Shown here: positions 13,075-41,561 of the stretch, one piece after another
Layout: every line of letters begins with the position of its first letter
Numbering within the stretch: the first letter of the stretch is position 1
NCBI GenBank assembly: GCA_964247055.1
Contig: OZ176060.1
Coordinates: forward strand, 868,001-932,000
Direction: 5' to 3'
DNA from: Paragordius varius
Taxonomy: Eukaryota > Animalia > Nematomorpha
DNA length: 64,000 bases
Program-made: the position numbers and the translations under genes
The notes under the pieces: generated by a model
What the model was told of the DNA's origin: nothing
What the model saw: only the letters and a program-made list of their open reading frames with translations
Databases searched by the model: none

Positions 13075-13717
13075 AATCGAAAATAAAGTAATTCTTGTTG
13101 AAAAAATAAATTCTTAAAAAAAATGTAATTAATAAAAAGGGTTTTTTGACTGGAAAATTACCAAATAATAGACAATATTAAATATCACAAATTTTCAAAA
13201 ATAATTCTATCTTTTAAATTTCAAAAATAATTATCTAAAACAAAGAGTTCTCAAAACCAAAATTATTTGTTATATTAATAATTTTTTTTTATAAATTTAA
13301 AAGAAGAATTATTTAAAACAAAGAAATACTCTAGAAAATTAAAATCATTTCTTGTTAAATAAATAATTTTTTTTAAAAAAAATGCTCTTTTAAATGAAAA
13401 ACGTTTTATTTGATTGGGAAAAAGATTTTTTTTTGACTGAAAATTACCAAATAATAGATATTTTACAATTTCAAAAATAAATTCCATCTTTAAGAAGAAT
13501 TATTTATAAAATGCAAAAATTTATAAAAAGTTTTTTTGATTGATAAAATTTACCATAGATATTTTTCAAAATTTCAAAAATAAATTCCATCTTTAAGAAG
13601 AATTATTTATAAAACTCGAAAATAAAAAAGTATTGAATGGAAAATTACCAAATAATAGATATTTTTTTACAAAATTTCAAAAATATTTATTCCATCTTTT
13701 AAACCTAAAAAGAATTA
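13075..13717 (+). repeat. Satellite family A, block 2
   Basis: Same A modules as 430-7800. Confidence 0.9.
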
Positions 13718-14375
13718 GATCACCTGATTTTTTGCTTTACGGATATGCCTGTTATAGAATTGTGATTAAAACTAGTTTATAAAAATTATTATTGTCGCAT
13801 TTATTTAGATTTTTTTAATAAGAAAACACATGTTTTATTCTTATTATTATACATTCATTCATTGATCACCTGATTTTTTGTTTTAACGGATGTGCCTGTT
13901 ATAGAAGTGTGATTGAAAAATCACCCCTTTAATTATTATTGTCGCATTTATTTTGATTTTTTAATGGGAAAAATGCTTTATTCTTTTATTCTCATACATT
14001 CATTCATTGATCACCTGTCTTCTTTTTACGATCATCTGATTTTTTAGGACCTACTTGAGTTACTCTTTATATTATACATTCAAATGTTTAAAAATACCTG
14101 ATTTATATATTTTTAAGAATTCGCAGATACTAAGTTTAATTATTTTATCAGATATATCGAATTTAGATATGTAAAATTTTATATAAATATAGTTTTTTAT
14201 TTTTTAGTTTAATACATACATTCATTCATTAATCACCTGATTTTTTGCTTTAACGGATGTGCCTATTATAGAATAGTGATTAAAACTAGCATATAAAAAT
14301 TATTATTGTCGCATTTATTATAATTTTTTTTAATAAAAAAATGTTTTATTCATTCATTGATCACCTGATTTTTTA
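13718..14375 (+). repeat. Family D block 1: decayed eIF1 exon-start / 3'-UTR-derived repeats
   Basis: About six CATTCATTCATTRATCACCTGATTTTT motifs. Three are followed by GGAT(A/G)TGCCT(G/A)TTATAGAA..GTGATT (~13741, ~13888, ~14255), a diverged form of GGAATTTGCCTGTAATGGAACTGTGATT (eIF1 EFACNGTVI). Confidence 0.75.
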
Positions 14376-20090: not shown

Positions 20091-20871
20091 TCTAATTTTT
20101 TATCTTAAAAAACCTATATTATATTTGAGGGTAAATTTGAATTGTTTAAGGGTAAATTTAAATTCTAATGGTATATAAATCAAGTATATAGAAATTTTTA
20201 TTTTTTAAAAATATATTAAAATATAGGTAATTTTTTATCTTAAAAAACATATTTTTTATATTTGAGGGTGAATTTGAATTGTTTAAGGGTGAATTTGAAT
20301 TGTAATGGTATATAAATTAAGTATATAGAAATTTTTATTTTATAAAATATATTAAAATATAGGTAATTTTTAATCTTAAAAAACATATATTTTATTTGAG
20401 GGTGAATTTGAATTGTTCAAGGGTAATTTTGAATTGTAATGGTATATAAATCAAGTAAATAGAAATTTTTATTTATAAAAATATATTAAAATATAGGTAA
20501 TTTTTTATCTTAAAAAACATATTTTTTATATTTGAGGGTAAATTTGAATTGTAATGGCATATTTTATTATTTTTTCAGTATTCAAAATTTTTATTTTTAT
20601 AAAAATATATTAAAATATAGGTATTTTTTTCATCTTAAAAAACATATATTTTATTTGAGGGTGAATTTGAATTGTTTAAGGGTGAATTTGAATTGTAATG
20701 GTATATAAATCAAGTATATAGAAATTTTTATTTATAAAAATATATTCTAAAATATATTAAAATATAGGTAATTTTTTATCTTAAAAAACATATATTTTAT
20801 TTGAGGGTGAATTTGAACTCTAATGGTATATAAATTTTTATTTAAAACAAAATTTTTATTTATAAAAATAT

Positions 20872-23409
20872 CACTAGACAACAAATTTTTTGGCCAAATG
20901 AGATTATTTTCGTTTTAGTTAGCTAATAGTATACTTATACCAAAAATTTAAAAAAAAATGGGCTACTTGAAAGGATTTTTCAAAAAATAAATTTTTCTGT
21001 TTTTTGAAAAAACGGTAATTTAACAAGTTAATCAAAGATATCAACTACAAAACTGCTTTATATGTAGACAGATTATATATCAATCGATAGAGAGTAATCG
21101 ATTATATATAAAAAATATAAAGATAAATGATTTTAATTAATATGCTTATAAAATTTCAATTTAAAATAGCAAAAATTAACGTTTTTTTGTGAGCGAAAAT
21201 CTTAAACTGTAAAGTTTGCTAAAAAATTACGGTAAATAACAATTTTTAACTAATAAACATTGCTCTTTCAGAATAAAGAAATATTTTTTCTGTATAAAAA
21301 GTTTTTGTCGCTTTTATGAGGTGATTTTCATTTGCAGTGATGTGTTAAATTTTATTAAAATATATACAAAAATACTTTCCTAGTGCATTAATGTATAAGT
21401 TTTTAAATCAAATCGTTGATACGAGCGAGATCCCGCAAGCAGGTATTTATCCTTATAATATAGAACGCAACTGCAAAAATGATCCGAACAATTTTTGTAT
21501 GTGCTGCGGAAGAACAATATTAATGGTTTAATGGAAGAAATTAACATAAATTATAATCCCGAGGACTGGGCATTATTATAAGATTCCAACATGGTTAAAA
21601 AAATATTCATAATATTAGGTAAGCTTGAAATTCATATTGGTGAATATACAGGATAACAAGTATCTTTTAATAATTGGGTATGCCAGGGCTGCCAAAGAAT
21701 CATATGAAATTTTCAAAAAAATTATAGAGTGTGTGAATTATACAAGGGATAATTGGAACGTTATTGGTGACTTTAAAGTAGCTAAAAATTAACATTTAGG
21801 TTTTATTGATGATTGCCGGCTTGCAGGGTGGGTTACCTAAGTACCACTGTATATTTTGTCTGTGGAACAGCAGGGAGCGTGACTTACACTATCGAACGAA
21901 AGACTGGGGTTCCAGAGTCTTCACAATTGGATTGCATAATTGTGTGAGGGAACCCCTCATTGATATAAAGAAAGTGTACATCCCCTGCCTACATATAGCA
22001 CTGGGACTCTTTTCAATATTTATTAAAAACTTGGATAAAACATCCAAATCGTTTATTTATTTTCAATCTAAACATAAACTCACCAAGGCTAAGGCAGAGG
22101 CCGGAGTGGTGACGGGGCCGGTGATGAAAAAAATATTTACAGATACATATTTTTTTGAACTACTTAATGAGAAAAATAGGCTAGCATTTGATGCTATGCA
22201 AAAATTTGATTCTGGGTTCTTAGGTTTGTATATTATAATATGTATAGGATCTTACAAATCGCCACGATATCTAGAGTTGGCAGAAAATTTAATAAGAAGT
22301 TTTCAGGATATGGGTAACTCAATATAGGTTGTCAAATGTCCATGAAAATGCACATGGTGGATGAGCACCTCAAGAATTTTCCCTTTAACAATATATCTGA
22401 CCAAATCGGGGAAAGAATGCATCAGGACCTGAAGATATTTGAAAAAAGATATAATAATAAAAATACTATTAATATGATATCTGATTTTATTTGGAATCAT
22501 ACATAATTTTTATATATTTATATGCCACCTATATGTATTTACAATAAATAAATGTATTGAAATTGTATTTATTTTGAAATCGATTTATTTAGCGTAAATA
22601 AATTGCTCTGTACAATATGTGATAAAAATCTTAATAATATGTTTCTCTGTTTAGTTTATTGAATATAATCTATAGATATCCATCAATTTATTTGAACAAT
22701 AAATAGGTTTGAGTTTTCAGATTTGTGTAAATTAAAAATTTCTTCACATAAATAGGATACCATAATCAATAAGTTTACGTAATATATGTGATTAATCCAT
22801 TTTCTATGATAATTACTCGGCCTATATATAAATGTTAATTTTACCATATCCATCTCGTTCAAATTTAAAAAAATATAAATATACACAAGGAAAATAGATT
22901 TTGCATAAAATTGGATTGGGTTCTCCGTTACTGATGTACTTAAATTGGTTCATAACTTTAAGTTAAAATTAAAATTGAACAAAAAAATATATATATTCTA
23001 AAAGCTGATGCTTTAATCTATAAATTAAATACGTTATCATTACACTGAGACATATTTACAAACGTTTGTGATGAGCTTGTAAAAAAGCAAAAAATTTAAC
23101 TATTATTCTCTTAATTCAAGATTTTTAATAAAGGCTTTCATAATATATTTATATGTAAAAGATAGAGTTTTTTATGCTTTATTTAATGATATAAGTTTCA
23201 TATTTTTTAATATTTTTCTCTCTAATAAAATATTTTATAAAGCGTCCGATTTATTGATTATTTTAAAATTTACAAAATATTAATTTTCTCAAAATCTATG
23301 CAAGCCAGGTCAAAAATTTTTTCGGATTCGGATTCTGAACAGTATACTTGATTAAATTTCCGATTTTTACAAATGGCTGTTAAAAAAAGTCAAAATTTGT
23401 TGTCTAGTG
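20872..23409 (+). mobile_element. CMC superfamily (Chapaev-3-like) DNA transposon, internally deleted, 2538 bp
   Basis: Perfect 18-bp TIRs CACTAGACAACAAATTTT (20872-20889) / AAAATTTGTTGTCTAGTG (23392-23409). TAT on both flanks (20869-20871, 23410-23412; candidate 3-bp TSD in an AT-rich context). Subterminal palindrome AGTATACT at both ends (20928-20935, 23341-23348). Contains a DDE transposase remnant. CAC...GTG termini are typical of Chapaev/CACTA. Confidence 0.9.
21391..22506 (+). pseudogene. Chapaev-3-type DDE transposase, spliced, defective
   Basis: Predicted exons 21391-21442, 21464-21593, 21619-21777, 21800-22223, 22248-22313, 22328-22506. Motifs: N-terminal CKNDPNNFCMCCG; GLMEE..YNPEDWALL*DS (D1 21582); WNVIGDFK (D2 21769); GLQGG.PKY.C.FC.W.SR; P.LHIALGL; MGCQMSMKMH; SDQIGERMHQD (E 22411); end ISDFIWNHT*. 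Lesions are a frameshifting deletion junction at ~21512 and an in-frame TAA at 21579-21581. Confidence 0.88.
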
Positions 23410-23656
23410 TATTTAAATATAGTAATTTTTTATCTTTTGAAAAAACATATATTTTATTTTAGGGTGAATTTGAATTGTTCAAGGGTGAATTTAAATTAAG
23501 TATATATAGAAATTTTTATTTGTAAATCAATCAAATATGATTTTTACATTGTAATCAAAATGTTTTTTATAAAAGAAATAAAAAAACTATGGTTGTTTTT
23601 CGAAAAAAAAATATATTTTTACATTTTGTCCGTATAAATTCGCAGTTTTCACTGTA

Positions 23657-25195
23657 TTTGTTTTCTAAAACAAAACACTTTATTCTTGATAAATCTCTAT
23701 AGATAGAAATTTCAAATTTCAAGTAAAAACTCGAAAAAAATAAGTAAAAGGAAATAATCTAATTAAAATTGATAATAAAAAATAATATTATTCTCTAAAA
23801 AAACACATTTTTTTGGATAAATCTCTTTTACTTAAAAGCTTAACAATATTAAAGTGAGTATATACTTAATTACTCGAGATTTTAATAGAGAAAGGTTTTT
23901 TAATCTAAAATATTCCTGTCCTTTGAAATTCCAAATGAAAACTCAAAAATTTATAAATAAGTAAAAGGAAACAATATAATTGAAATTGATTATACAGTAA
24001 AAATTTAAATTCTACGGAAAAAAAACATAAAAAATATAAAAACAAATATTTTATTCAAAAGACAACCATACTTTTAAAATTTTTATTTTTATATATATAT
24101 ATATACCATTTACAGTTCAAATTCACCCTTGAACAATTAAAATTTACCCTAAAAAGAAATTATGTGTTTTAGAAATAAATATAACTTATTAATTATATAT
24201 GAAATATATCTTTATGGCGCATAGTTTATTATTTTTTCAGTATTATATTATATTTTTTAAAAATATATATTAAAATATAGGTAATTTTTTATCTTAAAAA
24301 CAAATATTTTATTTGAGGATGAATTTGAATTGTTCAAGGGTGAATTTGAATTGTAATGGTATATAAATCAATTATATAGAAATTTTTATTGATAAATTAT
24401 TCAAATAAGTATTTTACATTGTAATCAAATGTTTTTTATAGAAGAAATTAAAAAAGTATGGTTGTTTTTTAAAAAAATATATTTTTTACATTTTGTCCGT
24501 ATAAATTCACAGTTTTCACTGTATTGGTTTTTTAAAACAAAACACTTTTTTTTTCTTAATAAATCTCTATAGATAGAATTTTCAAATTATAAAACTCGAA
24601 AAAATTGAGTAAAAGGAAATAATCTAGAAATTAAAATTGTTAATAATAATATTCTTTTTTAAAATAAAGTTTTTTTTTATAAATATTCTTTTACTTAAAA
24701 GCTTATTTATATTAAAGCGAGTATATACTTAATTACTCAAGTATTTTAAAAGCAAGGTTTTTTTAATTATTCATCTGGCTACCTTGCTCGAGTTAAAGCG
24801 AGATATAGTAATTTCAAGTAAAAACTCGAAAAAATAAAAAAATCTAATTAAAATTCATAATAATAATAATATTATTCTTTAAAATAAACACTTTATTTTT
24901 TAAAATAAGCACTTTATTTTTTAAAAAATCTCTTTTACTTAAAAGCTTCTTAATATTAAAGCGAGTATATTCTAAAATGTGTTTTAAAAAAAAGAAAAAG
25001 GTTTTTTACCTCTAAAAGCTTATTAAATTACAGCGAAATATATTTCAAATAAAAAACTCGAAAATAAAAAGAGTAAAATAAAATAATCTAATTAAAATTG
25101 ATAATAAAAATAATATTATACTTTAAATAAAGTTTTTTTTTATAAATTTTCTTATACCTAAAAGCTTTTTAATATTACAGCGAGTATATACTCTA
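23657..25195 (+). repeat. Satellite family B block (contains C-MITE 23995-24521)
   Basis: B modules as above. Confidence 0.9.
23995..24521. mobile_element. C-MITE, 527 bp
   Basis: TA|CAGTAAAAATTTAAATTCTACGG ... GTCCGTATAAATTCACAGTTTTCACTG|TA. Confidence 0.8.
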
Positions 25196-31170: not shown

Positions 31171-33202
31171 TCATAATCACTTGATTTTATACATTCATTC
31201 ATTGATCACCTGATTTTTTACATGTATTATTTAGGAATTTGCCTGCAATGGAATGATTGAAAAAACAACCCCTTAATTTTTGAATAAAATTTTAAATGAA
31301 ATATATTTTTAAAAGACATATTTGTGGTAATTTTTTCATTATAAAATTCATTCATTGATCACCTGATTTTTTCTAGGAATTTGCCTGTAATGGAACTGTG
31401 AATAAACATTCCTTAGTGTTTCAATAAAATTTTAAATAAAATATAATTTTTAAGGACTTATTTTTGATATTTTTTACCTTTGTTTCATTCATTCATTGAT
31501 CACCTGATTTTTGTTGAAATATCTAGGAATTTGCCTGTAATGGTGATTGAACACCCCTTAGTTTTGGAATAAAATTTTAAAAATATGTTAAGACATATTT
31601 GTGGTAATCTTTTTATCATTCATTCATTGATCACCTGATTTTTTTAGGAATTTGCCTGTAATGGAACTGTGATTGAAATCATTACTAAATTATATAAATT
31701 AAAGATTGTCGCATTTATATTGGCTCTAAAAAAATAGTTTTAGGAAAATTCTAATTTTGGGTTTTTTTCACGATCACATGATTTTATACATTCATTCATT
31801 AATCACCTGATTTTTTAGGAATTTGCCTGTAATGGAACTGTGATTGAACACCCCGAATTCGGGGAAGTCCTTCAACTCCAAGGCGATCAACGAAAGAATG
31901 TCAGCGGTTTCTTGGTTAAATCGGGAATAGCTAAACAGGAAGCACTTAAAATACACGGGTTTTAGCACACATTCATTAATCACCTGATTACCAACAGCTG
32001 TTTTATACACCTCTTTTTTTCAGCAAAACTTTTGTAAACTTGCTTCTTTTTTGGGATTAATCGGGAAATGCTAAGCCAGAAGTACTTAAAATACATGAAG
32101 TACACATTCATTAATCACCTGATTACCAACAGCTGTTCTTACACGTATTTATGTTCAACTATAGTTTTGTAAAACTCCCTTTCGGGATTAATCGGGAATA
32201 GCTAAGCAAGAAGTACTTGAAATATTCGTTTTTAGTTAATGTTCATTCATTCACACACTCAAGATCACCTGATTTTACTTTTTTGCAATTATTTAAAATT
32301 TCGCATAAACTTTTAAAGCTATAATATACATAAGTTTAAATGCAGATATTTACAAACTTAGGATCACCTGATTATTAATAGCAGCAGCTGTTTTTAACTA
32401 AAATCCAAAATTTATACCTACATAAATTCAAATTTTAAACACAAATCTCCGTTAAATCAAATTGCTATCTACGCATTCATTCACTGAATAACTCAAGATC
32501 ACCTGATTCTTTTTTCAATACTTTGTGTTTAAATTTTATCCTCTTTGGATCAAATATTTATTTTCGTTAACCACTAATCTATTATATAAGTTTTTGCGCA
32601 CTACATTCAATCTCACAATCATAAAATCACCTGGTTTTATAAAACTTAGTTTTAAAACATTAATTAAGATTGCGCACATTCATTCATTAAACACCTGTTT
32701 TACCTTTCCCTCATATAATAACCATGTTAGCGCTTATTTATTCAGTCGAATTATAAAACATATAATTAATGATAACTTTAATACATTCATTCATTAAACA
32801 CCTGTTTTACTAATTTATATGATAACCATGTTAACGCTCATTCATTCAGTCAGATGATAAAACATATGATTAATGATAACTTTTATAAATTCATTCATAA
32901 AACACCTGTTTTACCTTTACCTTATATAAAAACCATGTTAGCGCTCATTCATTCAGTCAGATGATAAAATATATGATTAATGATAACCTTATATATGATA
33001 TACTAATCTGGGCCCGCACTAATTCACGATAATAACTTGATAAAATCTTAGGTTAATTTCTAAAAAAAATATAATTTTTATATTATTTTTTTATTTTTAT
33101 ATTTTCTTTTAATATTTATATATTATATTTTACCTTAATGTTAAATTTTTTGGTTAATTACTTAAATTTGGTGTTTATCGCACATTCATTGATCAGCTGT
33201 TT
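31171..33202 (+). repeat. Family D block 2: eIF1-exon-derived tandem array
   Basis: Four partial copies of acceptor plus exon start (AG|GAATTTGCCTGYAATGG at 31235, 31377, 31527, 31648), the full exon at 31819, two copies of the exon 3' half (~32053, ~32184), then increasingly diverged CATTCATT...TCACCTG...CAGCTGTT derivatives. Confidence 0.88.
31819..31965 (+). pseudogene. EIF1: Isolated terminal coding exon of translation initiation factor eIF1 (SUI1), open and intact, 48 aa plus stop
   Basis: TTTTTTAG| acceptor (AG at 31817-18), then EFACNGTVIEHPEFGEVLQLQGDQRKNVSGFLVKSGIAKQEALKIHGF-TAG. Colinear with the animal eIF1 C-terminus (human KFACNGTVIEHPEYGEVIQLQGDQRKNICQFLVEIGLAKDDQLKVHGF*). I saw no upstream eIF1 exons in the window. 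Missed by the ORF track (no ATG, <60 aa). Confidence 0.95.
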
Positions 33203-33276
33203 AAAAATTATATTTTTTCATTCATTGTCTTTTTAAAAATTACAAAAAATTAACTTTTACACCTTTTACGAAACAA

Positions 33277-33395
33277 CAGTAGCGTATGGCAAAAAACAAA
33301 AAATGGTTTAAATTAAACAATATATTCCCAATGTTTTACCATACATATTTGTTTTTTAATTGTAGACAAAGTTTTTTTATACTTATACGCCACTG
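33277..33395. mobile_element. Small foldback/MITE-like element, 119 bp
   Basis: Termini CAGTAGCGTAT / ATACGCCACTG (10/11 inverted match), plus inner inverted AAAAAACAAAAAATGGT / ACCATACATATTTGTTTTTT. No clear TSD. Confidence 0.5.
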
Positions 33396-33559
33396 TAAAT
33401 TTTTTTGAATAATTAATAACTAACTTTTGCCATTAAAGTACACACATATATATATTTTTTAATGCTATATTGTACTTTTATTGATTTTTTTCTTTTATAA
33501 ATACTATTTTGTATCTTAATTGACTCACTCGCATTATTATTTCTTATATGTAAATGGAA

Positions 33560-34890
33560 TTTTAATTTTTATAAAATATATAAATATATTATAAGTTTTA
33601 AAAATTAATTTTAATGATTTTATATATATGAGTGAACATATGATTATGTGTATGTATGTATGCCATTAATAAATAATATTTATTAATTTATTTGCTCTAA
33701 TAATTTTTAGTAAAAAAAATTAAAATTATTATTTTGAAATTTTATTTAATTTTTATTCAGAAAATATATATTTTTTTATATAATTAATTTTAAAATAAAT
33801 AATTTTATATAAAAATAAATTTTTATTAATTTTTATATAAAAAATTAAAATTTTTATTTAATTTTAAATAATTTTTATTATATAGAAGAAATATATATTT
33901 ATATAATTTTGTTTAAAAATAAATAATTTTATGTAAAAATATATTTCTTATATAATTTTTATTAAAAAAACTTAAAATTTTTTTTTTAAAAATTTTAAAT
34001 TTTATTATCCAGAAAATATATATATTTATATAATTTTGTTTTAAAAATAAATAATTTTATATAAATATATATTTCTTATAGAATTTTATGAAAATTATTT
34101 ATATGAAATTTTTAAATTTTAATATCCAGAAAATAAATATATTTATTTTATAATTATATAATTTTGTTTAAAATAAATAATTTTTATTAATTTATTTGCT
34201 CTAATAATTTTTATTAAAAAAAAAATAAAAAATATTATTTTGAAATTTTTATATAAATATATTTCTCTAGAATAATAAATTTCTATTTATATGATTTTGT
34301 TTTAAAAATAAATAATTTTATGTAAAAATATATTTCTTATATTATTTTTAAAAAAAATTAAATTTTTTATTTAATTTGATATTTTTAAATAATTATTAAT
34401 CTAGAATATAAATATATTTTATAATTAATTTTAAAACAATTTTATGTAAAAAATATATTTCTTATATTATTTTTATTAAAAAATATAAAATTATTATTTT
34501 GAAATTTTTATATAATTTTTATTATCCAGAACATATATATTTTATAATTTTGTTATAAAAATAAATAATTTTATGTAAAAATATATTTCTTATAGAATTT
34601 TTATTAAATAAATTAAAATTATTATTATTTTTATTATCCAGAAAATATATATATTTATATTAATATAATTTTGTTTTAAAAATAAATATTATATAAAAAT
34701 ATATTTCTCATAGAATTTTAATAAAAAAATTAATATTATTATTTTGAAATTTTTAAATAATTTTTATTATCTAGAAAAAATATATTTATTTTATAATTAA
34801 TTTTATAATCAATTTTTTAACATTGAAATGCTTATAATATTAAATAAATTTATTTTAAAAAATAATTTAATTTATAAAAATAAAGGTTAG
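33560..34890 (+). repeat. Family E, very AT-rich ~120-135-bp degenerate repeats
   Basis: Recurring TTATTATCCAGAAAATATATAT and ATAATTTTGTTTTAAAAATAAATAATTTTATGTAAAAATATATTTCTTAT. Confidence 0.75.
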
Positions 34891-35760
34891 TAAAAAATAT
34901 TTTTTTTAATTTTAATTTTAATTTTTTTTATTTAAAATGTGAATAATTTGAATAAATAAGAATTTTATATTTTTAATTTTATAGATATATTTTATAACAA
35001 CAAATAATTTATATTATAATAAATATTTATTTTTTTAATTTTAATTTTTTTATTTAAAATGTGAATAATTTGAATAAATAAGAATTTTATATTTAATTTT
35101 TTAGATATTTATTATAACAACAAATAATTTATGTTATAAAAAATATTTATTTTTTTTTCAATTTTAATTTTTTTATTTAAAATGTGAATAATTTTAATAA
35201 TAATAAGAATTTAATATTTAATTTTATAGAAATATTTTATAACAAACAAATAATTTATGTTATAAAAAATATTTTTTTTTAATTTTAATTTTTTTTTATT
35301 TAAAATGTGAATAATTTGAATAAAAAAGAATTTTATATTTAATTTTTTAGATATATTATAACAACAAATAATTTATGTTATAAAAAATATTTTTTTTTTA
35401 ATTTTAATTTAAATTTATTTAAAATTTGAATAATTTAAATAATAATAAGAATTTTATATTTAATTTTTTTGAAATATAATATTATAAAAACAAATTTTAT
35501 GTTATAAAAATATTTATTTTTTTTAATTTTAATTTTAATTTTTTTAAAATTTGAATAATTTGAATAAATAAGAATTTTATATTTAATTTTATAGAAATAT
35601 TTTATAACAACAAATAATTTATGTTATAAATATTTATTTTTTTTCAATTTTAATTTTTTTTTTATTTAAAATGTGAATAATTTGAATAATAATAAGAATT
35701 TTATATTTAATTTTATAGAAATATAAACAACAAATAATTTATGTTATAAAAAATATTTTT
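34890..35760 (+). repeat. Family F, ~122-bp tandem repeat x7
   Basis: AAAATGTGAATAATTTGAATAAATAAGAATTTTATATTTAATTTTATAGA...ATAACAACAAATAATTTATGTTATAAAAA. Confidence 0.9.
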
Positions 35761-36580
35761 ATCTTTAAGAAAAATTATTTAAAAACTCGAAAATAAATAA
35801 ATTATTTTAAGTAAAATAGAAAATTACTAAATAATAGCTAATATGAAATCTCATAAATTTCAAAAATATTCCATCTTTTAAATTTAAAAGAAGAATTATT
35901 TAAAACAAAGAAATACTCTAGAAAATTTAAACATTTCTTGTTTAATGAATAAATTTTTTTTTAAATTTAAAAGAAGAATTATTTTTAAAACTCAAAAATA
36001 AAAAGTTTTTTTGACTGAAAAATTACTAAATAATAGATATTTTACTAATTTTCAAAAATATAAATTTCATCTTTAAGAAGAATTATTTATAAAAAAAGAA
36101 TTATTTAAAAAAACTCGAAAACTAAAATCAATTCTTGTTGAAACAATAAATTTTTCTTTTAAAAATGCTTTTTTAAATGGAAAACGTTTTAATTCTTAAT
36201 TAAAAAGGATTTTTTTGTCTAGAAAATTACCAAATAATAGATATTTAACAAAATTTCAAAAATATTAAATTTTTCTTTTAAAATAATTCCATCTTTTAAA
36301 TTTAAAAGAAGAATTATCTAAAACAAAAAGAGTTCTCGAAAACTAAAATCATTTCTTGTTAAATCAATAAATTTTTTTTTAAAAAATAAATTAATTTTTC
36401 TTTTAAAAATTTAAAAAATTCAAAACGTTTTGATTGATTGGGAAAAAGGTTTTTTTTGATTGATAAAAATTACCAAATAATAGCTAATATGAAATTCTCA
36501 TAATTTTAAAAATAAATTCCATTTATTAAATCTAAAAGAAGAATTATTTATAAAACTCGAAAATAAAAAGGTTTTTAGAT
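35761..36580 (+). repeat. Satellite family A, block 6
   Basis: A modules. Confidence 0.9.
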
Positions 36581-37734
36581 CTAAAATATTCCTGTGGCTT
36601 TTAAATGTAAAACTCGAAAAAATTGAGTAAAAGGAAATAATCTAGAAATTGAAATTGATAATAAATATAATATTTTTCTTTAAAATAAAGACTTTTTTCT
36701 TAAAAATCTCTTTTACTTAAAAGCTTCTTATTATTACAGCGAGTATATACTACATTACTCAAATATTTTAAGAAAAAGAAAGAAAGAAATATGATTTTAA
36801 TCAAAAATATTCATGTGGCTTACTTGTTCGAGTTAGGGCGAAAAATAAAAATTTCAACTAAAAACTCGAAAAAAGTAAGTAAAAGGAAATAATCTAGAAA
36901 TTGAAATTTATAATAAAAATTATATTATTCTTTAATATAAAAACTTTTTTCTTGATAAATCTCTTTTTTAGAAGCTAATCATTATTACAGCGAGTATATA
37001 CTACATTTCTCAAGAATTTTAAGACAAAAATTCGAAAAAAAGTAGTAAAAGGAAAGAATCTAATTAAAATTGATAATAATAATAATAAAAAAATCAATAT
37101 TAAAGCGAGTATATACTACATTAATCAAGTATTTTAAAAGCAAGGTTTTTTTTTAATCTAAAATATTCATCTGGCTTACTTGCTCGAGTCAGAACGAGAA
37201 ATAAAGTTTTTTCTTAATAAAACTCGAAAAAATTAAGTAAAAGCAAAAAATCTAATTGAAATTGTTAATAATAATATTATTATTCTCTAAAACAAAACAC
37301 TTTTTTTCTTGATAAATCTCTTTTTAAAAGCTTATATTATTACAGCGAGTCTAAACCTAACTCAAGTATTTTAAAAACAAAGACTTTTATTCTAATAGAA
37401 ATTTTAAAATTAAAAAGTAAAAGGAAACAATCTAGAAATTGAAATTGATAATAATGATATAATTCTCTAAAACAAAAACTAATTCTTAATAAATCTCTTT
37501 TACTTAAAAGCTTCTTAATATTAAAGCGAGTATATACTACATTACTCAAGTATTTTAAGACAAAAACTCGAAAAAAAGAAGTAAAAGAATAATCTAATTA
37601 AAATTGTTAATTATAATATTATTCTCTGAAATAAACACTTTTTTATTAATAAATCTCTTTTACTTAAAAGCTTAATATTACAGCGAGTATTTACTACATT
37701 ACTCAAGTATTTTAAGAGAAAAAATTAATAAGGT
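36581..37734 (+). repeat. Satellite family B block
   Basis: B modules. Ends abruptly at the eIF1 fragment. Confidence 0.9.
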
Positions 37735-39125
37735 ACCCCGAATTCGGGGAAGTCCTTCAACTCCAAGGCGATCAACGAAAGAATGTCAGCGGTTTTCTGG
37801 TTAAATCGGGAATAGCTAAACAGGAAGCACTTAAAATACACGGCTTTTAGCACACATTCATTAATCACCTCATTTCAAACAGCTGTTATTACCTCTTTTT
37901 TTCAACAAACTCTTGTAAAACTTACTTTTTGGTTAAATCGGGAATAGCTAAACAGGAAGCACTTAAAATACACGGCTTTTAGCACACATTCATTAATCAC
38001 CTGATCACTAACAGCTGTTATTACCTATTTACCAATTCAACTAACTTTTGTAAAACCTACTTTTTGGGATTATTCGGGAATTGCTAAACAGGAAGGACTT
38101 AAAATACACGGGTTTTAGCACACATTCATTAATCACCTGATTTCAAACAGCTGTTATTACCTCTTTTTTTCAACAAACTCTTGTAAAACTTACTTTTTGG
38201 TTAAATCTGGAATAGCTAAACAGGAAGCACTTAAAATACACGGGTTTAAGCACACATACATTAATCACCTGATTATCAACAGCTGTTATTACCTCTTTTT
38301 TTCAACTAAAACTTTTGTAAAACTTACTTTTTGGGATTAATCGGAAATAGATAAACCAGAAATACTTAAAATGCACGAGTTTTAGCACACATTATTTTAT
38401 AAACTCAAGATCATCTGATTTAACTTAATTGCAATTATTTAAAATCCTAAATCTTAAAATACATGGGTGGGTTTAAAATGCACATATTTACAAACTTAAG
38501 ATCACTTGATTATTAATAGCAGCAGCTGTTTTAACTCAATAATCAAATATTCAAAACTCCTTATCTTTCCTACATAAATTCAAATTTTAAACACAATTCT
38601 CCTTTAAACTCAAATTGCTTTTTACGCATTCATTCATTGAATAACTCAAGATCACCTGATTTTTTTATAACCTTTTTCTCTGTTTAAATTTTTATCTTCT
38701 TTGGATAAAATTTTAATTTTCGTTAACCAGTAATCTATTATATAAGTTTTTGCGCACTACATTCAAACTCATAATCATAAAATCACCTGGTTTTATAAAA
38801 CTTTGTTTTTAAACATAAATTATGAAAGCGCACATTCATTCATAAAACACCTGTTTTACCTTTACTTATATAATAACCTCAAGTTTGCGCTCATTCATTC
38901 AGTCAGATGATAAAACAATGATTAATGATAACTTTTAAACATAAGATATACTAATCTAGCACGCATTAATTCACTAACTTGATAAATTGATAAATTAGGT
39001 TAATTTCCAAAAAAAATTTATTATTATTTATTGTTTTTATTATTTTTCATTTTACCTTAATGTTTAAATTTTTTGGTTAATTACTTAAATTTTGTGTTTA
39101 TCGCACATTCATTGATCAGCTGTTT
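37735..39125 (+). repeat. Family D block 3: ~134-bp repeats of the eIF1 exon 3' half plus 3' UTR, then diverged derivatives
   Basis: (GGTTAAA/GGGATTAA)TCGGGAATAGCTAAACAGGAAGCACTTAAAATACACGGSTTTTAGCACACATTCATTAATCACCTGA-type units at ~37931, 38066, 38199, 38333. 38400-39125 is colinear with 32250-33202. Confidence 0.88.
37737..37850 (+). pseudogene. EIF1: 5'-truncated second copy of the eIF1 terminal exon
   Basis: PEFGEVLQLQGDQRKNVSGFLVKSGIAKQEALKIHGF-TAG, the same peptide as 31852-31965. Joined directly to B satellite at ~37735. Confidence 0.93.
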
Positions 39126-39212
39126 AAAAACTATATATTTTTCAATAATTATTGTCTTTTTGAAAAAATTACAAAAAATTAACTTTTATAAAACATATCT
39201 TTTACGAAACAA

Positions 39213-39328
39213 CAGTAGCGTATGGCAAAAAACAAAAAATGGTGTAAATTAAACAATATATTCCCAATGTTTTACCATAATTTGCTTATTTAATTGAGAT
39301 CAAAGTTTTATATACTTATACGCCACTG
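39213..39328. mobile_element. Second copy of the small CAGTRGCGTAT foldback element, 116 bp
   Basis: Same termini as 33277-33395, in the same context. Confidence 0.5.
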
Positions 39329-39479: not shown

Positions 39480-41170
39480 ATTTTTATAAAATATATAAAT
39501 ATTATAAGTTTTAATAATTAATTTTAATGAGTTTATGAACATATGATTATGTGTATGTATGTATGCCATTAATAAATAATATTTATTAATTTATTTGCTC
39601 TAATAATTTTTTATTAAAAAAATTGAAATATTATTTTGAAATTTTTATATAATTTTCAGAAAATATATATATTTATATAATTTTGTTTTAAAAATAAATA
39701 ATTTTATGTAAAAATATATTTCTTATATTATTTTTTATTTAAAAAAATATTATTTAATTTTGAAATTTTTAAATAATTATTTTTTTATCTAAAAAAAATA
39801 TATATATTTAATAATTTTGTTTTAAAACTATTTTTTAACATTAAAAAATAAATTAAAAATAATTTAATTAAATTAAATATATAAAAATAAAGGCTTTAAT
39901 TTTATTTTTTTATTTATAATGTGAATAATTTGAATAAATAAGAATTTTAATTTAATTTATTAGATAATTATAACAACAAATAATTTATTTTATAAAAAAT
40001 ATTTATTTTTTTTTAATTTTTATTTTTTTATTTAAAATTTGAATAATTTGAATAATAATTAAGAATTTTATATTTAATTTTTTAGATATATTATAACAAC
40101 AAATAATTTATGTTATAAAAAATATTTATTTTTTTTAATTTTTAATATTTTTATTTAAAATGTGAATAATTTGAATAATAATAATTTAATATTTTTAATT
40201 TTATAGATATATTATAACAACAAATAATTTATGTTATAAAAAATATTTTTTTTTAATTTTAATTTTTTTATCTAAAATGTGAATAATTTGAATAAATAAG
40301 AATTTTATATTTAATTTTTTAGATATATAACAACAAATAATTTATGTTATAAAAAATATTTTTTTTTTTAATTTTAATTTTTTAATTTAAAAAGTGAATA
40401 TTTTGAATAAATAAGAATTTTATATATAATTTTCTAGATATAATATTATAAAAAATAATTTATTTTATAAAAATATTTATTTTTAAATTTTAATTTTTTA
40501 TTTAAAAAGTGAATAATTTGAATAAATAAGAATTTTATATTTAATTTTATAGAAATATTTTATAACAACAAATAATTTATGTTATAAAAAATTTTTTTAA
40601 TTTTTTTAATTTTAATTTTTTTATTTAAAATGTGAATAATTTGAATAATAAATAAGAATTTTATATTTAATTTTATAGATATATATTATAACAACAAATA
40701 ATTTATATTATAAAAAATATTTATTTTTTTTTAATTTTAATTTTTTATTTAAAATGTGAATAATTTGAATAATAAATAAGAATTTTATATTTAATTTTAT
40801 AGATATATTTTATAACAACAAATAATTTATATTATAAAAAATATTTTTATTTTTTATAATTTTAATTTTTTATTAAAAATTTGAATAATTTGAATAAATA
40901 AAAATTTTATATTTAATTTTATAGATATATATTATAACAACAAATTTATGTTATAAAAAATATTTATTTTTTTTTAATTTTAATTTTTTTATTTAAAATT
41001 TGAATAATTTGAATAAATAAGAATTTTATATTTAATTTTATAGATATATATTATAACAATAAATAATTTATGTTATAAAAAATAATTATTTTTTCAATTT
41101 TAATTTTTTTATTTAAAATATGAATAATTTGAATAAATAAGAATTTTATATTTAATTTTCTAGATATAAT
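39480..41170 (+). repeat. Family E (39480-39890) and family F ~120-bp repeat x~11 (39890-41170)
   Basis: Same units as 33560-35760, with different copy numbers. Confidence 0.88.
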
Positions 41171-41561
41171 TTATTAAAAAATTTTTTATTAAAATTTATT
41201 TTTTAAAAATTTCAATCTTTGAGAAATCATATAAGATTTTTATTATTTTTTTATTATTTTTAATATTTATAATATTGTAACACGAAATTAAAAAATAAAG
41301 TTTTATAAGTTATTATATATTTTTTTTTAAAAAACATTTTAAAAATAATAGTTTGAAACAAAAAGTGGTTTTTTAATAAAAAAATTTATTTTTAAATGAA
41401 TAAAAATATAATAAATAAAAATAAAAAATAAATAAATAAAAAATGCAAAAATTATGATTAAATCAAAATTTATAAATTTTAAGGACCAACTTAAACTGTT
41501 CAAGAACATACTTGGAGTGCAAATGGTATATATAAATTTATTTATTAAAATTTTTTTTAAA

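What the first reader, a model, noticed from the sequence alone, without database searches (positions are those of the whole stretch)
31171..33202. A satellite born from a captured eIF1/SUI1 last exon, with a visible divergence gradient
Seen: one intact eIF1 terminal exon (31819-31965) with its splice acceptor and stop. Upstream are four tandem copies of [3'-UTR motif CATTCATTRATCACCTGATT + acceptor + EFACNG(TVIE)]. Downstream are copies of [KSGIAKQEALKIHGF* + 3' UTR] that decay progressively, until only CACATTCATT..TCA(C/G)CTG remains at ~33190. The conserved D motif is simply the first ~25 nt after the eIF1 stop codon. Known: the peptide matches the C-terminus of animal eIF1. Inference: a housekeeping-gene fragment was captured into a mobile or amplifying repeat unit and became the seed of a new tandem-repeat family. 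I am not aware of a described eIF1-derived satellite but cannot search.
Basis: partly seen in the sequence, partly recalled or inferred. Interest (0 to 1): 0.88.

Follow-up and report, generated by a model that had tools for sequence, protein, structure and literature searches.

The report
Tandem copies of eIF1's last exon
One intact copy of the last exon of the translation factor eIF1 sits among about thirty decaying tandem copies of itself and its edges, most likely made by repeated local duplication and sequence exchange, not by capture into a mobile element.

Summary
An intact eIF1/SUI1 terminal exon lies at 31819-31965. Four upstream units carry [D motif + T-tract + AG + first 25-40 nt of the exon]. 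Downstream units carry [last ~50 nt of the exon + stop + D + 60 nt] and decay until only D is left at 33202.

The same family recurs at 37725-39125, with an exon truncated at a 14-nt palindrome, and in older form at 13712-14373. All copies are on the + strand. The ancestral unit was probably the whole exon plus a ~30-nt spacer (about 177 bp), which would explain why D lies both after the stop and before the acceptor.

I found no transposon hallmarks. The truncated second exon copy is 97% identical to the intact one, with 3 of 3 differences synonymous, inside flanks that are only 81% identical. This points to sequence exchange with a functional eIF1 exon, so intactness alone does not show that the exon is used.

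No upstream eIF1 exons lie in the 31.8 kb before the exon. No RNA support was found.

The scan has found this before on other DNA of the same genome: "exon echoes" in other genes, and further eIF1 copies, including a gene just before this window. I read this as a striking new case of that phenomenon, not a captured, mobile satellite.

The parts
13712..14373 (+). Old, diverged cluster of about 5 whole-exon-type units (D at 13719 as a half motif, then 13856, 14001, 14223, 14351). The acceptor AG is lost.
   Evidence: nhmmer hits. Units are homologous to A4 over their whole length, z 13-17. Sequence.
31177..31190 (+). Probable remnant of a decayed exon end at the left edge of the array, abutting the ~110-bp satellite.
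   Evidence: The same 14-nt element precedes D at 31774-31787 and aligns with the exon end plus stop. This is inference.
31192..31616 (+). Units A1-A3: D + T-tract + AG + first ~25-40 nt of the exon + an AT-rich tail of about 80 nt. Homology to the exon ends at CACCCC, the left edge of the palindrome.
31617..31788 (+). Unit A4. Its first 61 nt are 97% identical to the intact unit. Its 110-nt tail is probably a decayed copy of the exon body.
   Evidence: The tail aligns collinearly with the exon body, z 2.4, reached by 10 of 500 shuffles. Unit length is 172 nt against 177.
31789..31818 (+). D motif followed by the T-tract and AG acceptor. The CTGAT inside D fits a branch-point consensus (inference).
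31819..31965 (+). Intact eIF1/SUI1 terminal exon: 48 codons plus TAG, GC 44%.
31851..31864 (.). Perfect 14-nt palindrome CCCCGAATTCGGGG inside the exon. Two independent rearrangement breakpoints lie at its left edge.
   Evidence: Breakpoints seen.
31966..32049 (+). 3' flank: D (31966-31989) followed by 60 nt carrying CAGCTG.
32050..32330 (+). Units B1 and B2: last ~50 nt of the exon + stop region + D + ~60 nt. They are 83% and 76% identical to the exon-proximal unit.
32331..32675 (+). Further decayed units in which only split D motifs are still recognisable.
   Evidence: They are orthologous to 38395-38831 at 82%.
32676..32995 (+). 107-bp sub-array (3 copies) built from D variants, including an inverted D-like piece.
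   Evidence: TRF. Inverted matches I1, I16 and I17.
33179..33202 (+). Last D-like motif, carrying CAGCTG in place of CACCTG.
37736..37850 (+). Second exon copy, truncated on its 5' side exactly at the palindrome and joined to another satellite. It is 112/115 identical to the intact exon, and all 3 differences are synonymous.
37851..38470 (+). Second 3' array: the exon-proximal unit b0 is completed here by its D and 60 nt (37851-37926); young units b1-b3 follow, and b0-b3 are 88-95% alike and 91-95% identical to the first array's proximal unit. The older unit b4 follows.
   Evidence: B2 and b4 pair on the tree with 100/100 support.
38471..39125 (+). Decayed units, one 107-bp unit and a terminal D-like motif, collinear with 32331-33202.

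Best explanation
This is an "exon echo" locus: a module made of the eIF1 terminal exon and tandem copies of that exon and its edges. It was produced in place by repeated short tandem duplication (replication slippage or unequal exchange).

**How it arose**
- The ancestral unit was probably the whole exon plus a ~30-nt spacer. The spacer is the first 24 nt of the 3' flank (D) fused to the T-tract and AG of the next copy. That explains why D flanks the exon on both sides.
- Internal deletions, some starting at the 14-nt palindrome in the exon, produced the 5'-type and 3'-type units.
- New units arise next to the intact exon and older ones are pushed outward and decay towards AT. This gives the gradient.
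- The module was then copied by larger segmental duplications: about 6 kb downstream, and an older copy 17.5 kb upstream.

**Why the copies stay fresh**
The exon-derived parts are kept fresh by sequence exchange (gene conversion) with a functional eIF1 exon.

**Status of the intact exon**
- Orphan duplicate of the 3' end of the nearby eIF1 gene: about 0.55.
- Exon that the gene actually uses: about 0.3.

**Shown and inferred**
- Shown: the anatomy, the homology, the uniform strand, the gradient and the synonymous-only differences.
- Inferred: the duplication mechanism, the gene conversion and the orphan status.
For: **Anatomy and homology**
- All 16 nhmmer copies are on the + strand and head-to-tail.
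- A4 and the 13.7-kb units share a full-length tail. That tail aligns collinearly with the exon body, and the unit length matches (172 nt against 177).

**Gradient and unit ages**
- The first array runs 100, 83, 76% and then background.
- B2 and b4 are orthologous, so they predate the block duplication. Units b0-b3 are young.

**Freshness of the exon parts**
- The exon part of the two blocks is 97.4% identical, with 3 of 3 differences synonymous. The flanks are 81-82% identical.
- Two further variants seen in contigs (31893, 31959) are also synonymous.
- The truncated copy cannot be a working exon yet is equally fresh.

**Copy number and unit variation in reads**
- Contig joints run from D to D: 31212 to 31786, and 31512 to 31810.
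- Summed contig depth over the exon is about 9-16 times the single-copy depth.

**No transposon signal, and rarity elsewhere**
- No terminal inverted repeats around the arrays; the nearby transposon's ends are unrelated.
- Among 81 loci with the homologous exon from other eukaryotes, only one has any same-strand junction copies.

**Against current use as an exon**
- No N-terminal eIF1 exons in the window.
- Runs labelled RNA? hold none of the sampled words.
Against: - The exon is perfectly intact, with a good acceptor and GC of 44% in DNA of 17-26% GC. It is flanked by arrays just as real exons of this genome are said to be, so it may be functional.
- Support for the tail being a decayed exon body is only moderate: 10 of 500 and 124 of 2000 shuffles reach the observed score.
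- Gene conversion is inferred from a mosaic of identities. No donor was seen.
- The position and structure of the parent gene rest on untested first-reader notes.
- eIF1 copies on other pieces of the assembly (notes) could mean some form of mobility.
Confidence: 0.55

Rival explanations
1. It is the terminal exon that an eIF1 gene really uses. The upstream exons lie before the window, which would need an intron of at least 34 kb filled with satellites, old echo clusters and a transposon. The arrays would then be echoes inside that intron and the 3' flank.
For: - The reading frame, T-tract and AG are intact, and GC is 44%.
- All differences from other copies are synonymous.
- The old cluster at 13.7 kb lies on the same strand, as an old intronic echo array would.
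- Notes of the scan report kb-scale, repeat-filled introns and an eIF1 gene just upstream.
Against: - No upstream exon lies within 31.8 kb.
- Neighbouring notes speak of that gene's own 3' flank.
- RNA? runs with the same species label hold none of the words.
- No protein with this C-terminus is in a 5.8-billion-protein collection.
- Four perfect decoy acceptors lie directly upstream.
- A truncated copy is equally fresh, so freshness does not show use.
Confidence: 0.3
2. A mobile element (Helitron-like, or circular-DNA reinsertion) captured the exon and spread it.
For: - Copies occur at three places in the window.
- According to notes, copies also lie on other pieces of the assembly.
- D is conserved at every unit boundary.
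Against: - No terminal inverted repeats and no transposase are linked to the arrays. The only nearby transposon has unrelated ends.
- All copies are tandem and co-oriented.
- The copies in the window share their flanking satellite context, as segmental duplicates do.
- D is explained by the unit structure.
Confidence: 0.08
3. The arrays are functional. They would act as decoy splice acceptors, or as repeated D sites (CACCTG and CAGCTG E-box-like motifs) that serve as protein- or RNA-binding platforms regulating eIF1.
For: - D is far better kept than the rest of the decayed units, and it is strictly strand-specific.
- AATAAA is absent from 1.4 kb downstream of the stop in both arrays.
Against: - The AATAAA deficit is weak (P about 0.03-0.06), and the two arrays are homologous, so they are not independent.
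- Old units lose the AG and decay.
- Unit number varies between samples.
- No RNA family matches.
Confidence: 0.07

Closest known systems
"Exon echoes" noted earlier by this scan in the same genome (s1-243080 with follow-up, s1-252944, s1-243176, s1-290667, and eIF1 notes s1-252891, s1-273714, s1-253021, s1-253157)
   Same: Tandem, same-strand copies of an exon edge with its splice signal lie next to the source exon. They decay with distance and appear to exchange sequence with the real exon.
   Different: Here the unit appears to have begun as the whole terminal exon. The module is itself duplicated three times in 26 kb, and no upstream exons accompany it.
Tandem genomic duplication across an exon-intron boundary, the duplication model of intron gain (PMC3265369, PMC2891723, PMC4974935)
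   Same: A short tandem duplication that includes a splice site leaves a duplicated junction. One copy becomes non-coding without harming the mRNA.
   Different: Those are single events that create an intron. Here there are dozens of units at both ends of one exon, and no new intron is shown.
Satellite DNAs seeded by genic sequence, such as 5S rDNA- or tRNA-derived satellites and Stellate/Su(Ste) of Drosophila (from my own knowledge, not checked here)
   Same: A gene fragment becomes the monomer of a tandem array.
   Different: The monomer here is a protein-coding terminal exon with its acceptor. Copy number is in the tens, not thousands, and the arrays adjoin an intact exon.
Gene-fragment capture by transposons such as Helitrons and Pack-MULEs (from my own knowledge)
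   Same: Orphan exon fragments lie away from the parent gene.
   Different: No element ends, inverted repeats or target duplications were found. The copies are tandem, not dispersed as single insertions.
eIF1 gene on metagenome contig L001, an unrelated eukaryote of ordinary GC content
   Same: The same intron (between ...KK and EFACNG...) carries three tandem copies of the acceptor plus 43 nt of exon, an older copy upstream, and one copy of the donor junction.
   Different: There are only 2-3 copies and no 3' array. The organism is unknown.

Membership tests
eIF1/SUI1 (Pfam PF01253) coding sequence | Significant match to the SUI1 domain, above the curated cut-off | tested here: met
   38.1 bits against a cut-off of 25.5, profile positions 41-76 of 77.
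eIF1/SUI1 (Pfam PF01253) coding sequence | Collinear with the C-terminus of solved eIF1, up to the stop | tested here: met
   Residues 1-48 align with 66-113 of human eIF1, E = 1e-20.
eIF1/SUI1 (Pfam PF01253) coding sequence | A complete gene: N-terminal exons upstream on the same strand | tested here: not met
   No N-terminal match anywhere in the window. Notes place an eIF1 gene before the window start; I did not test this.
Expressed terminal exon | RNA reads spliced into 31819 | tested here: inconclusive
   The four runs laid were DNA contigs.
Exon-junction echo array | Copies hold the exon edge plus its splice or stop signal, on the same strand, next to the source exon | tested here: met
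Exon-junction echo array | Divergence rises with distance from the exon | tested here: met
   Downstream identity runs 100, 83, 76% and then background. Upstream it is 97% for A4 and 75-92% for A1-A3, which is not strictly monotonic.
Satellite DNA | Head-to-tail arrays of a defined monomer | tested here: met
   TRF periods of 140, 135 and 107.
Satellite DNA | High copy number and long homogeneous arrays | tested here: not met
   About 30 heterogeneous units in three clusters in the window. Contig depth suggests about 9-16 genome copies of the exon pieces.
Transposon-captured gene fragment | Element termini (inverted repeats, hairpin, target duplication) bounding the fragment | tested here: not met
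   No bounding inverted repeats. The nearby transposon's terminal repeats are unrelated to D.
Known structured RNA | Match to an Rfam family | tested here: not met
   No match at gathering scores in 12000-42000.

The most novel reading that the evidence does not exclude
In this lineage a directed process keeps budding copies of the edges of functional exons into the flanking DNA and exchanges sequence back with them. Breaks at the exon's palindrome and pairing at the D motif would drive it. Introns and 3' flanks would then grow from their own exons, and the arrays would hold a dated fossil series of the exon, visible as synonymous-only differences even in dead copies.
Probability: 0.15. Interest if true: 0.85.

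Novelty: new variant of a known kind. Interest (0 to 1): 0.6.

Why it matters
If exon-edge arrays are as common in this genome as the scan's notes say, they point to a little-described way for introns and gene flanks to grow: from the exons themselves, not from transposons.

This locus is a good test case for four reasons:
- It shows both ends of one exon.
- It has three copies of different age.
- It has rearrangement breakpoints at a palindrome.
- It includes a dead copy kept 97% identical with only silent differences, which gives a direct handle on gene conversion between a gene and its debris.

It also raises a splicing question. How is the right acceptor chosen when four perfect decoys sit just upstream?

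Tried and rejected
**Searching for this organism's own eIF1 protein**
- Three searches found nothing above 77% identity: the whole representative library, the 5.8-billion collection with the exon alone, and that collection with a carrier alignment that admits full-length proteins. The parent mRNA and its 3' UTR could not be fetched.
- An end-to-end alignment meant to give a profile built only from this exon failed, because MAFFT aligned the rows globally.
- A metagenome scan gave 80 loci, none closer than 75%. I used them as a control instead.

**RNA evidence**
- All four runs laid were DNA contigs.

**Reaching the DNA before the window**
- ORFs in the first 13 kb were too poor to use as handles.

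**Homology tests that failed**
- The tails of A1-A3, and the 60-nt piece of the 3' units, show no significant similarity to the exon.
- I rejected the idea that the ~110-bp flanking satellite derives from eIF1. Only non-significant lysine-rich matches appeared.

**Other checks**
- The absence of AATAAA downstream of the stop is not significant.
- P0004, with 12 matched stretches, is a bacterial TPR protein and a spurious hit.
- The satellite review (PMC5615363) has nothing on exon-derived satellites.

Full report
**Setting**

The window has 16.9% GC and is almost entirely tandem repeats. Earlier notes of the scan call the genome that of an AT-rich animal related to horsehair worms, with 21-31-nt introns. 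I did not test this. One published horsehair-worm genome has 26.9% GC (10.1101/2023.06.26.546503), which is compatible.

- 31819-31965 is an open 48-codon stretch ending HGF and TAG, preceded by a T-tract and AG.
- It passes Pfam SUI1 (38.1 bits, cut-off 25.5) and aligns end to end with residues 66-113 of human eIF1.
- Its GC is 44%, against 23-26% in the arrays and 14% in the satellite upstream.
- The 20-nt D motif occurs 19 times at 2 or fewer mismatches, always on the + strand, where shuffles give none.
- CACCTG occurs 25 times on + and never on -.
- A profile of 31770-32050 finds 15 further + strand copies in three clusters: 13.7-14.4 kb, 31.2-32.3 kb and 37.7-38.4 kb.
- Contigs of independent DNA runs reproduce the unit junctions exactly.

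**Anatomy**

- *Upstream units.* A1-A4 (31192-31788) each carry D, a T-tract, AG and the first 25-40 nt of the exon.
- *Downstream units.* These carry the last ~50 nt of the exon, the stop, D and about 60 nt. Identity to the exon-proximal unit falls from 83% to 76%. After that only D is recognisable, ending in a 107-bp sub-array of D variants and a last D-like motif at 33183-33202.
- *Second block.* 37725-39125 is collinear with 31851-33202. Its exon copy starts exactly at the palindrome CCCCGAATTCGGGG and is joined on the left to a different satellite.
- *Old cluster.* The units at 13712-14373 have lost the AG.

**Why D lies on both sides of the exon**

- Unit A4 is 172 nt long; the intact unit, measured from D to D, is 177 nt.
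- The first 61 nt of A4 are 97% identical to the intact unit.
- Its tail aligns collinearly with the exon body, with z 2.4, reached by 10 of 500 shuffles.
- The 14 nt before the next D resemble the exon end plus stop.
- The 13.7-kb units are homologous to A4 over their full length, with z 13-17.
- A consensus of these tails that favours G and C matches 30 of 37 positions of the exon segment around "...GTCAGCGG...TTAAATCGGGAA". The support is modest: 124 of 2000 shuffles reach it.

I conclude, with moderate support, that the founding unit was the whole exon plus a ~30-nt spacer. The spacer is the first 24 nt of the 3' flank joined to the T-tract and AG of the next copy. The 5'-type and 3'-type units are deletion derivatives. 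It precedes the acceptor because decayed exon copies lie upstream of the intact exon.

**Breakpoints**

Homology of the A/C family to the exon stops at CACCCC, and the second block's exon copy begins at CCCC. Both points are the left edge of the 14-nt perfect palindrome. This is the only GC-containing palindrome of that length in the window. Two independent events at one point suggest breakage at a hairpin. This is inference.

**Ages and exchange**

- The two blocks are 81-82% identical in non-coding parts. Their exon parts are 112/115 identical, and all three differences are synonymous. About 22 differences would be expected at the flank rate, and only 22% of random changes would be synonymous.
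- Two more variants seen in contigs from elsewhere in the genome, at 31893 and 31959, are also synonymous.
- On a tree of the 3' units, B2 and b4 pair with full support. They are therefore older than the block duplication. Units b0-b3 of the second block are young, and as close to the first block's exon-proximal unit as to each other.
- The second copy lacks its acceptor and its first 32 nt. It cannot serve as an eIF1 exon, yet it is as fresh as the intact one.

The best account is repeated sequence exchange with a functional eIF1 exon that itself changes only silently. The consequence is that the intactness of 31819-31965 does not prove that it is used.

**Is it used?**

- I found no N-terminal eIF1 coding sequence anywhere in the window.
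- Notes place an eIF1 gene 2.1-5.6 kb before the window start and mention that gene's own 3' flank.
- Runs labelled RNA? with the same species label hold none of the sampled words of the exon and its flank.
- No protein with this C-terminus is in the large collections.

All of this is weak negative evidence. I put use as a real terminal exon at about 0.3.

**Not a mobile element**

- No inverted repeats bound the arrays.
- The transposon at about 20.1-24.4 kb has unrelated subterminal repeats.
- No Rfam family matches.
- The clusters at 13.7 kb and 31.2 kb both abut the same ~110-bp satellite at nearly the same point of its unit, as segmental duplicates would.

**Dynamics**

- Contig joints run from one D to another: 31212 to 31786, and 31512 to 31810. 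These are unit-number variants or paralogous arrays.
- Summed contig depth over the exon is 9-16 times the single-copy depth of about 210 in run X2. So more copies exist outside the window, in line with notes of eIF1 remnants on other pieces.

**How unusual**

Among 81 loci from other eukaryotes that hold the homologous exon, with 221 kb of flanks in total, only L001 shows same-strand junction copies. The control is limited, because many of these loci are short or are transcripts.

**Verdict**

The sequence facts are right and striking. The reading as a captured, mobile satellite is not supported. This is a strong instance of the exon-echo phenomenon that the scan has already met in this genome. 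It adds evidence for a whole-exon founding unit, for breakpoints at a palindrome, and for sequence exchange with a functional exon.

Noticed in passing
window 31851-31864 and 37736-37749: The perfect palindrome CCCCGAATTCGGGG encodes P-E-F-G. The Phe replaces a Tyr present in 78 of 80 homologous loci and in 230 of 294 motif matches among the fetched proteins (L in 60, mostly plant-type), and TAC to TTC is what makes the palindrome perfect. Coding palindromes are known in horsehair-worm mitochondrial genes (PMC6649704).
   Followed up: partly
L001:1040-1120 and L001:4735-5190: In an unrelated eukaryote on a metagenome contig, the same eIF1 intron has a duplicated donor junction and three tandem copies of the acceptor plus 43 nt of exon, with an older copy 300 nt upstream. 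A tRNA-like element lies between them.
   Followed up: partly
window 31966-33400 and 37851-39300: There is no AATAAA on the + strand in 1.4 kb after the stop in either array, against 8.3 per kb in the window as a whole. Local shuffles expect only about 3 (P 0.03-0.06), and the two arrays are homologous.
   Followed up: yes
window 33700-35800 and 39500-41400: Blocks of 7-8% GC satellite (periods about 123-128 bp) follow each eIF1-derived array and form part of the ~6-kb duplicated block.
   Followed up: no
window 20100-24360: A transposon-like segment (GC 23%) has repeated subterminal inverted motifs GAGGGTGAATTTGAATTGT on both sides of the transposase region that another note reports.
   Followed up: partly
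window 32676-32995: The 107-bp units hold two forward D variants and one inverted D-like piece, so each unit could fold back on itself.
   Followed up: no
window 37927-38470: The 3' units alternate between two start variants, GGTTAAATC (as in the exon) and GGGATTAATC (as in the older units). This hints at a two-unit higher-order repeat or patchy conversion.
   Followed up: no
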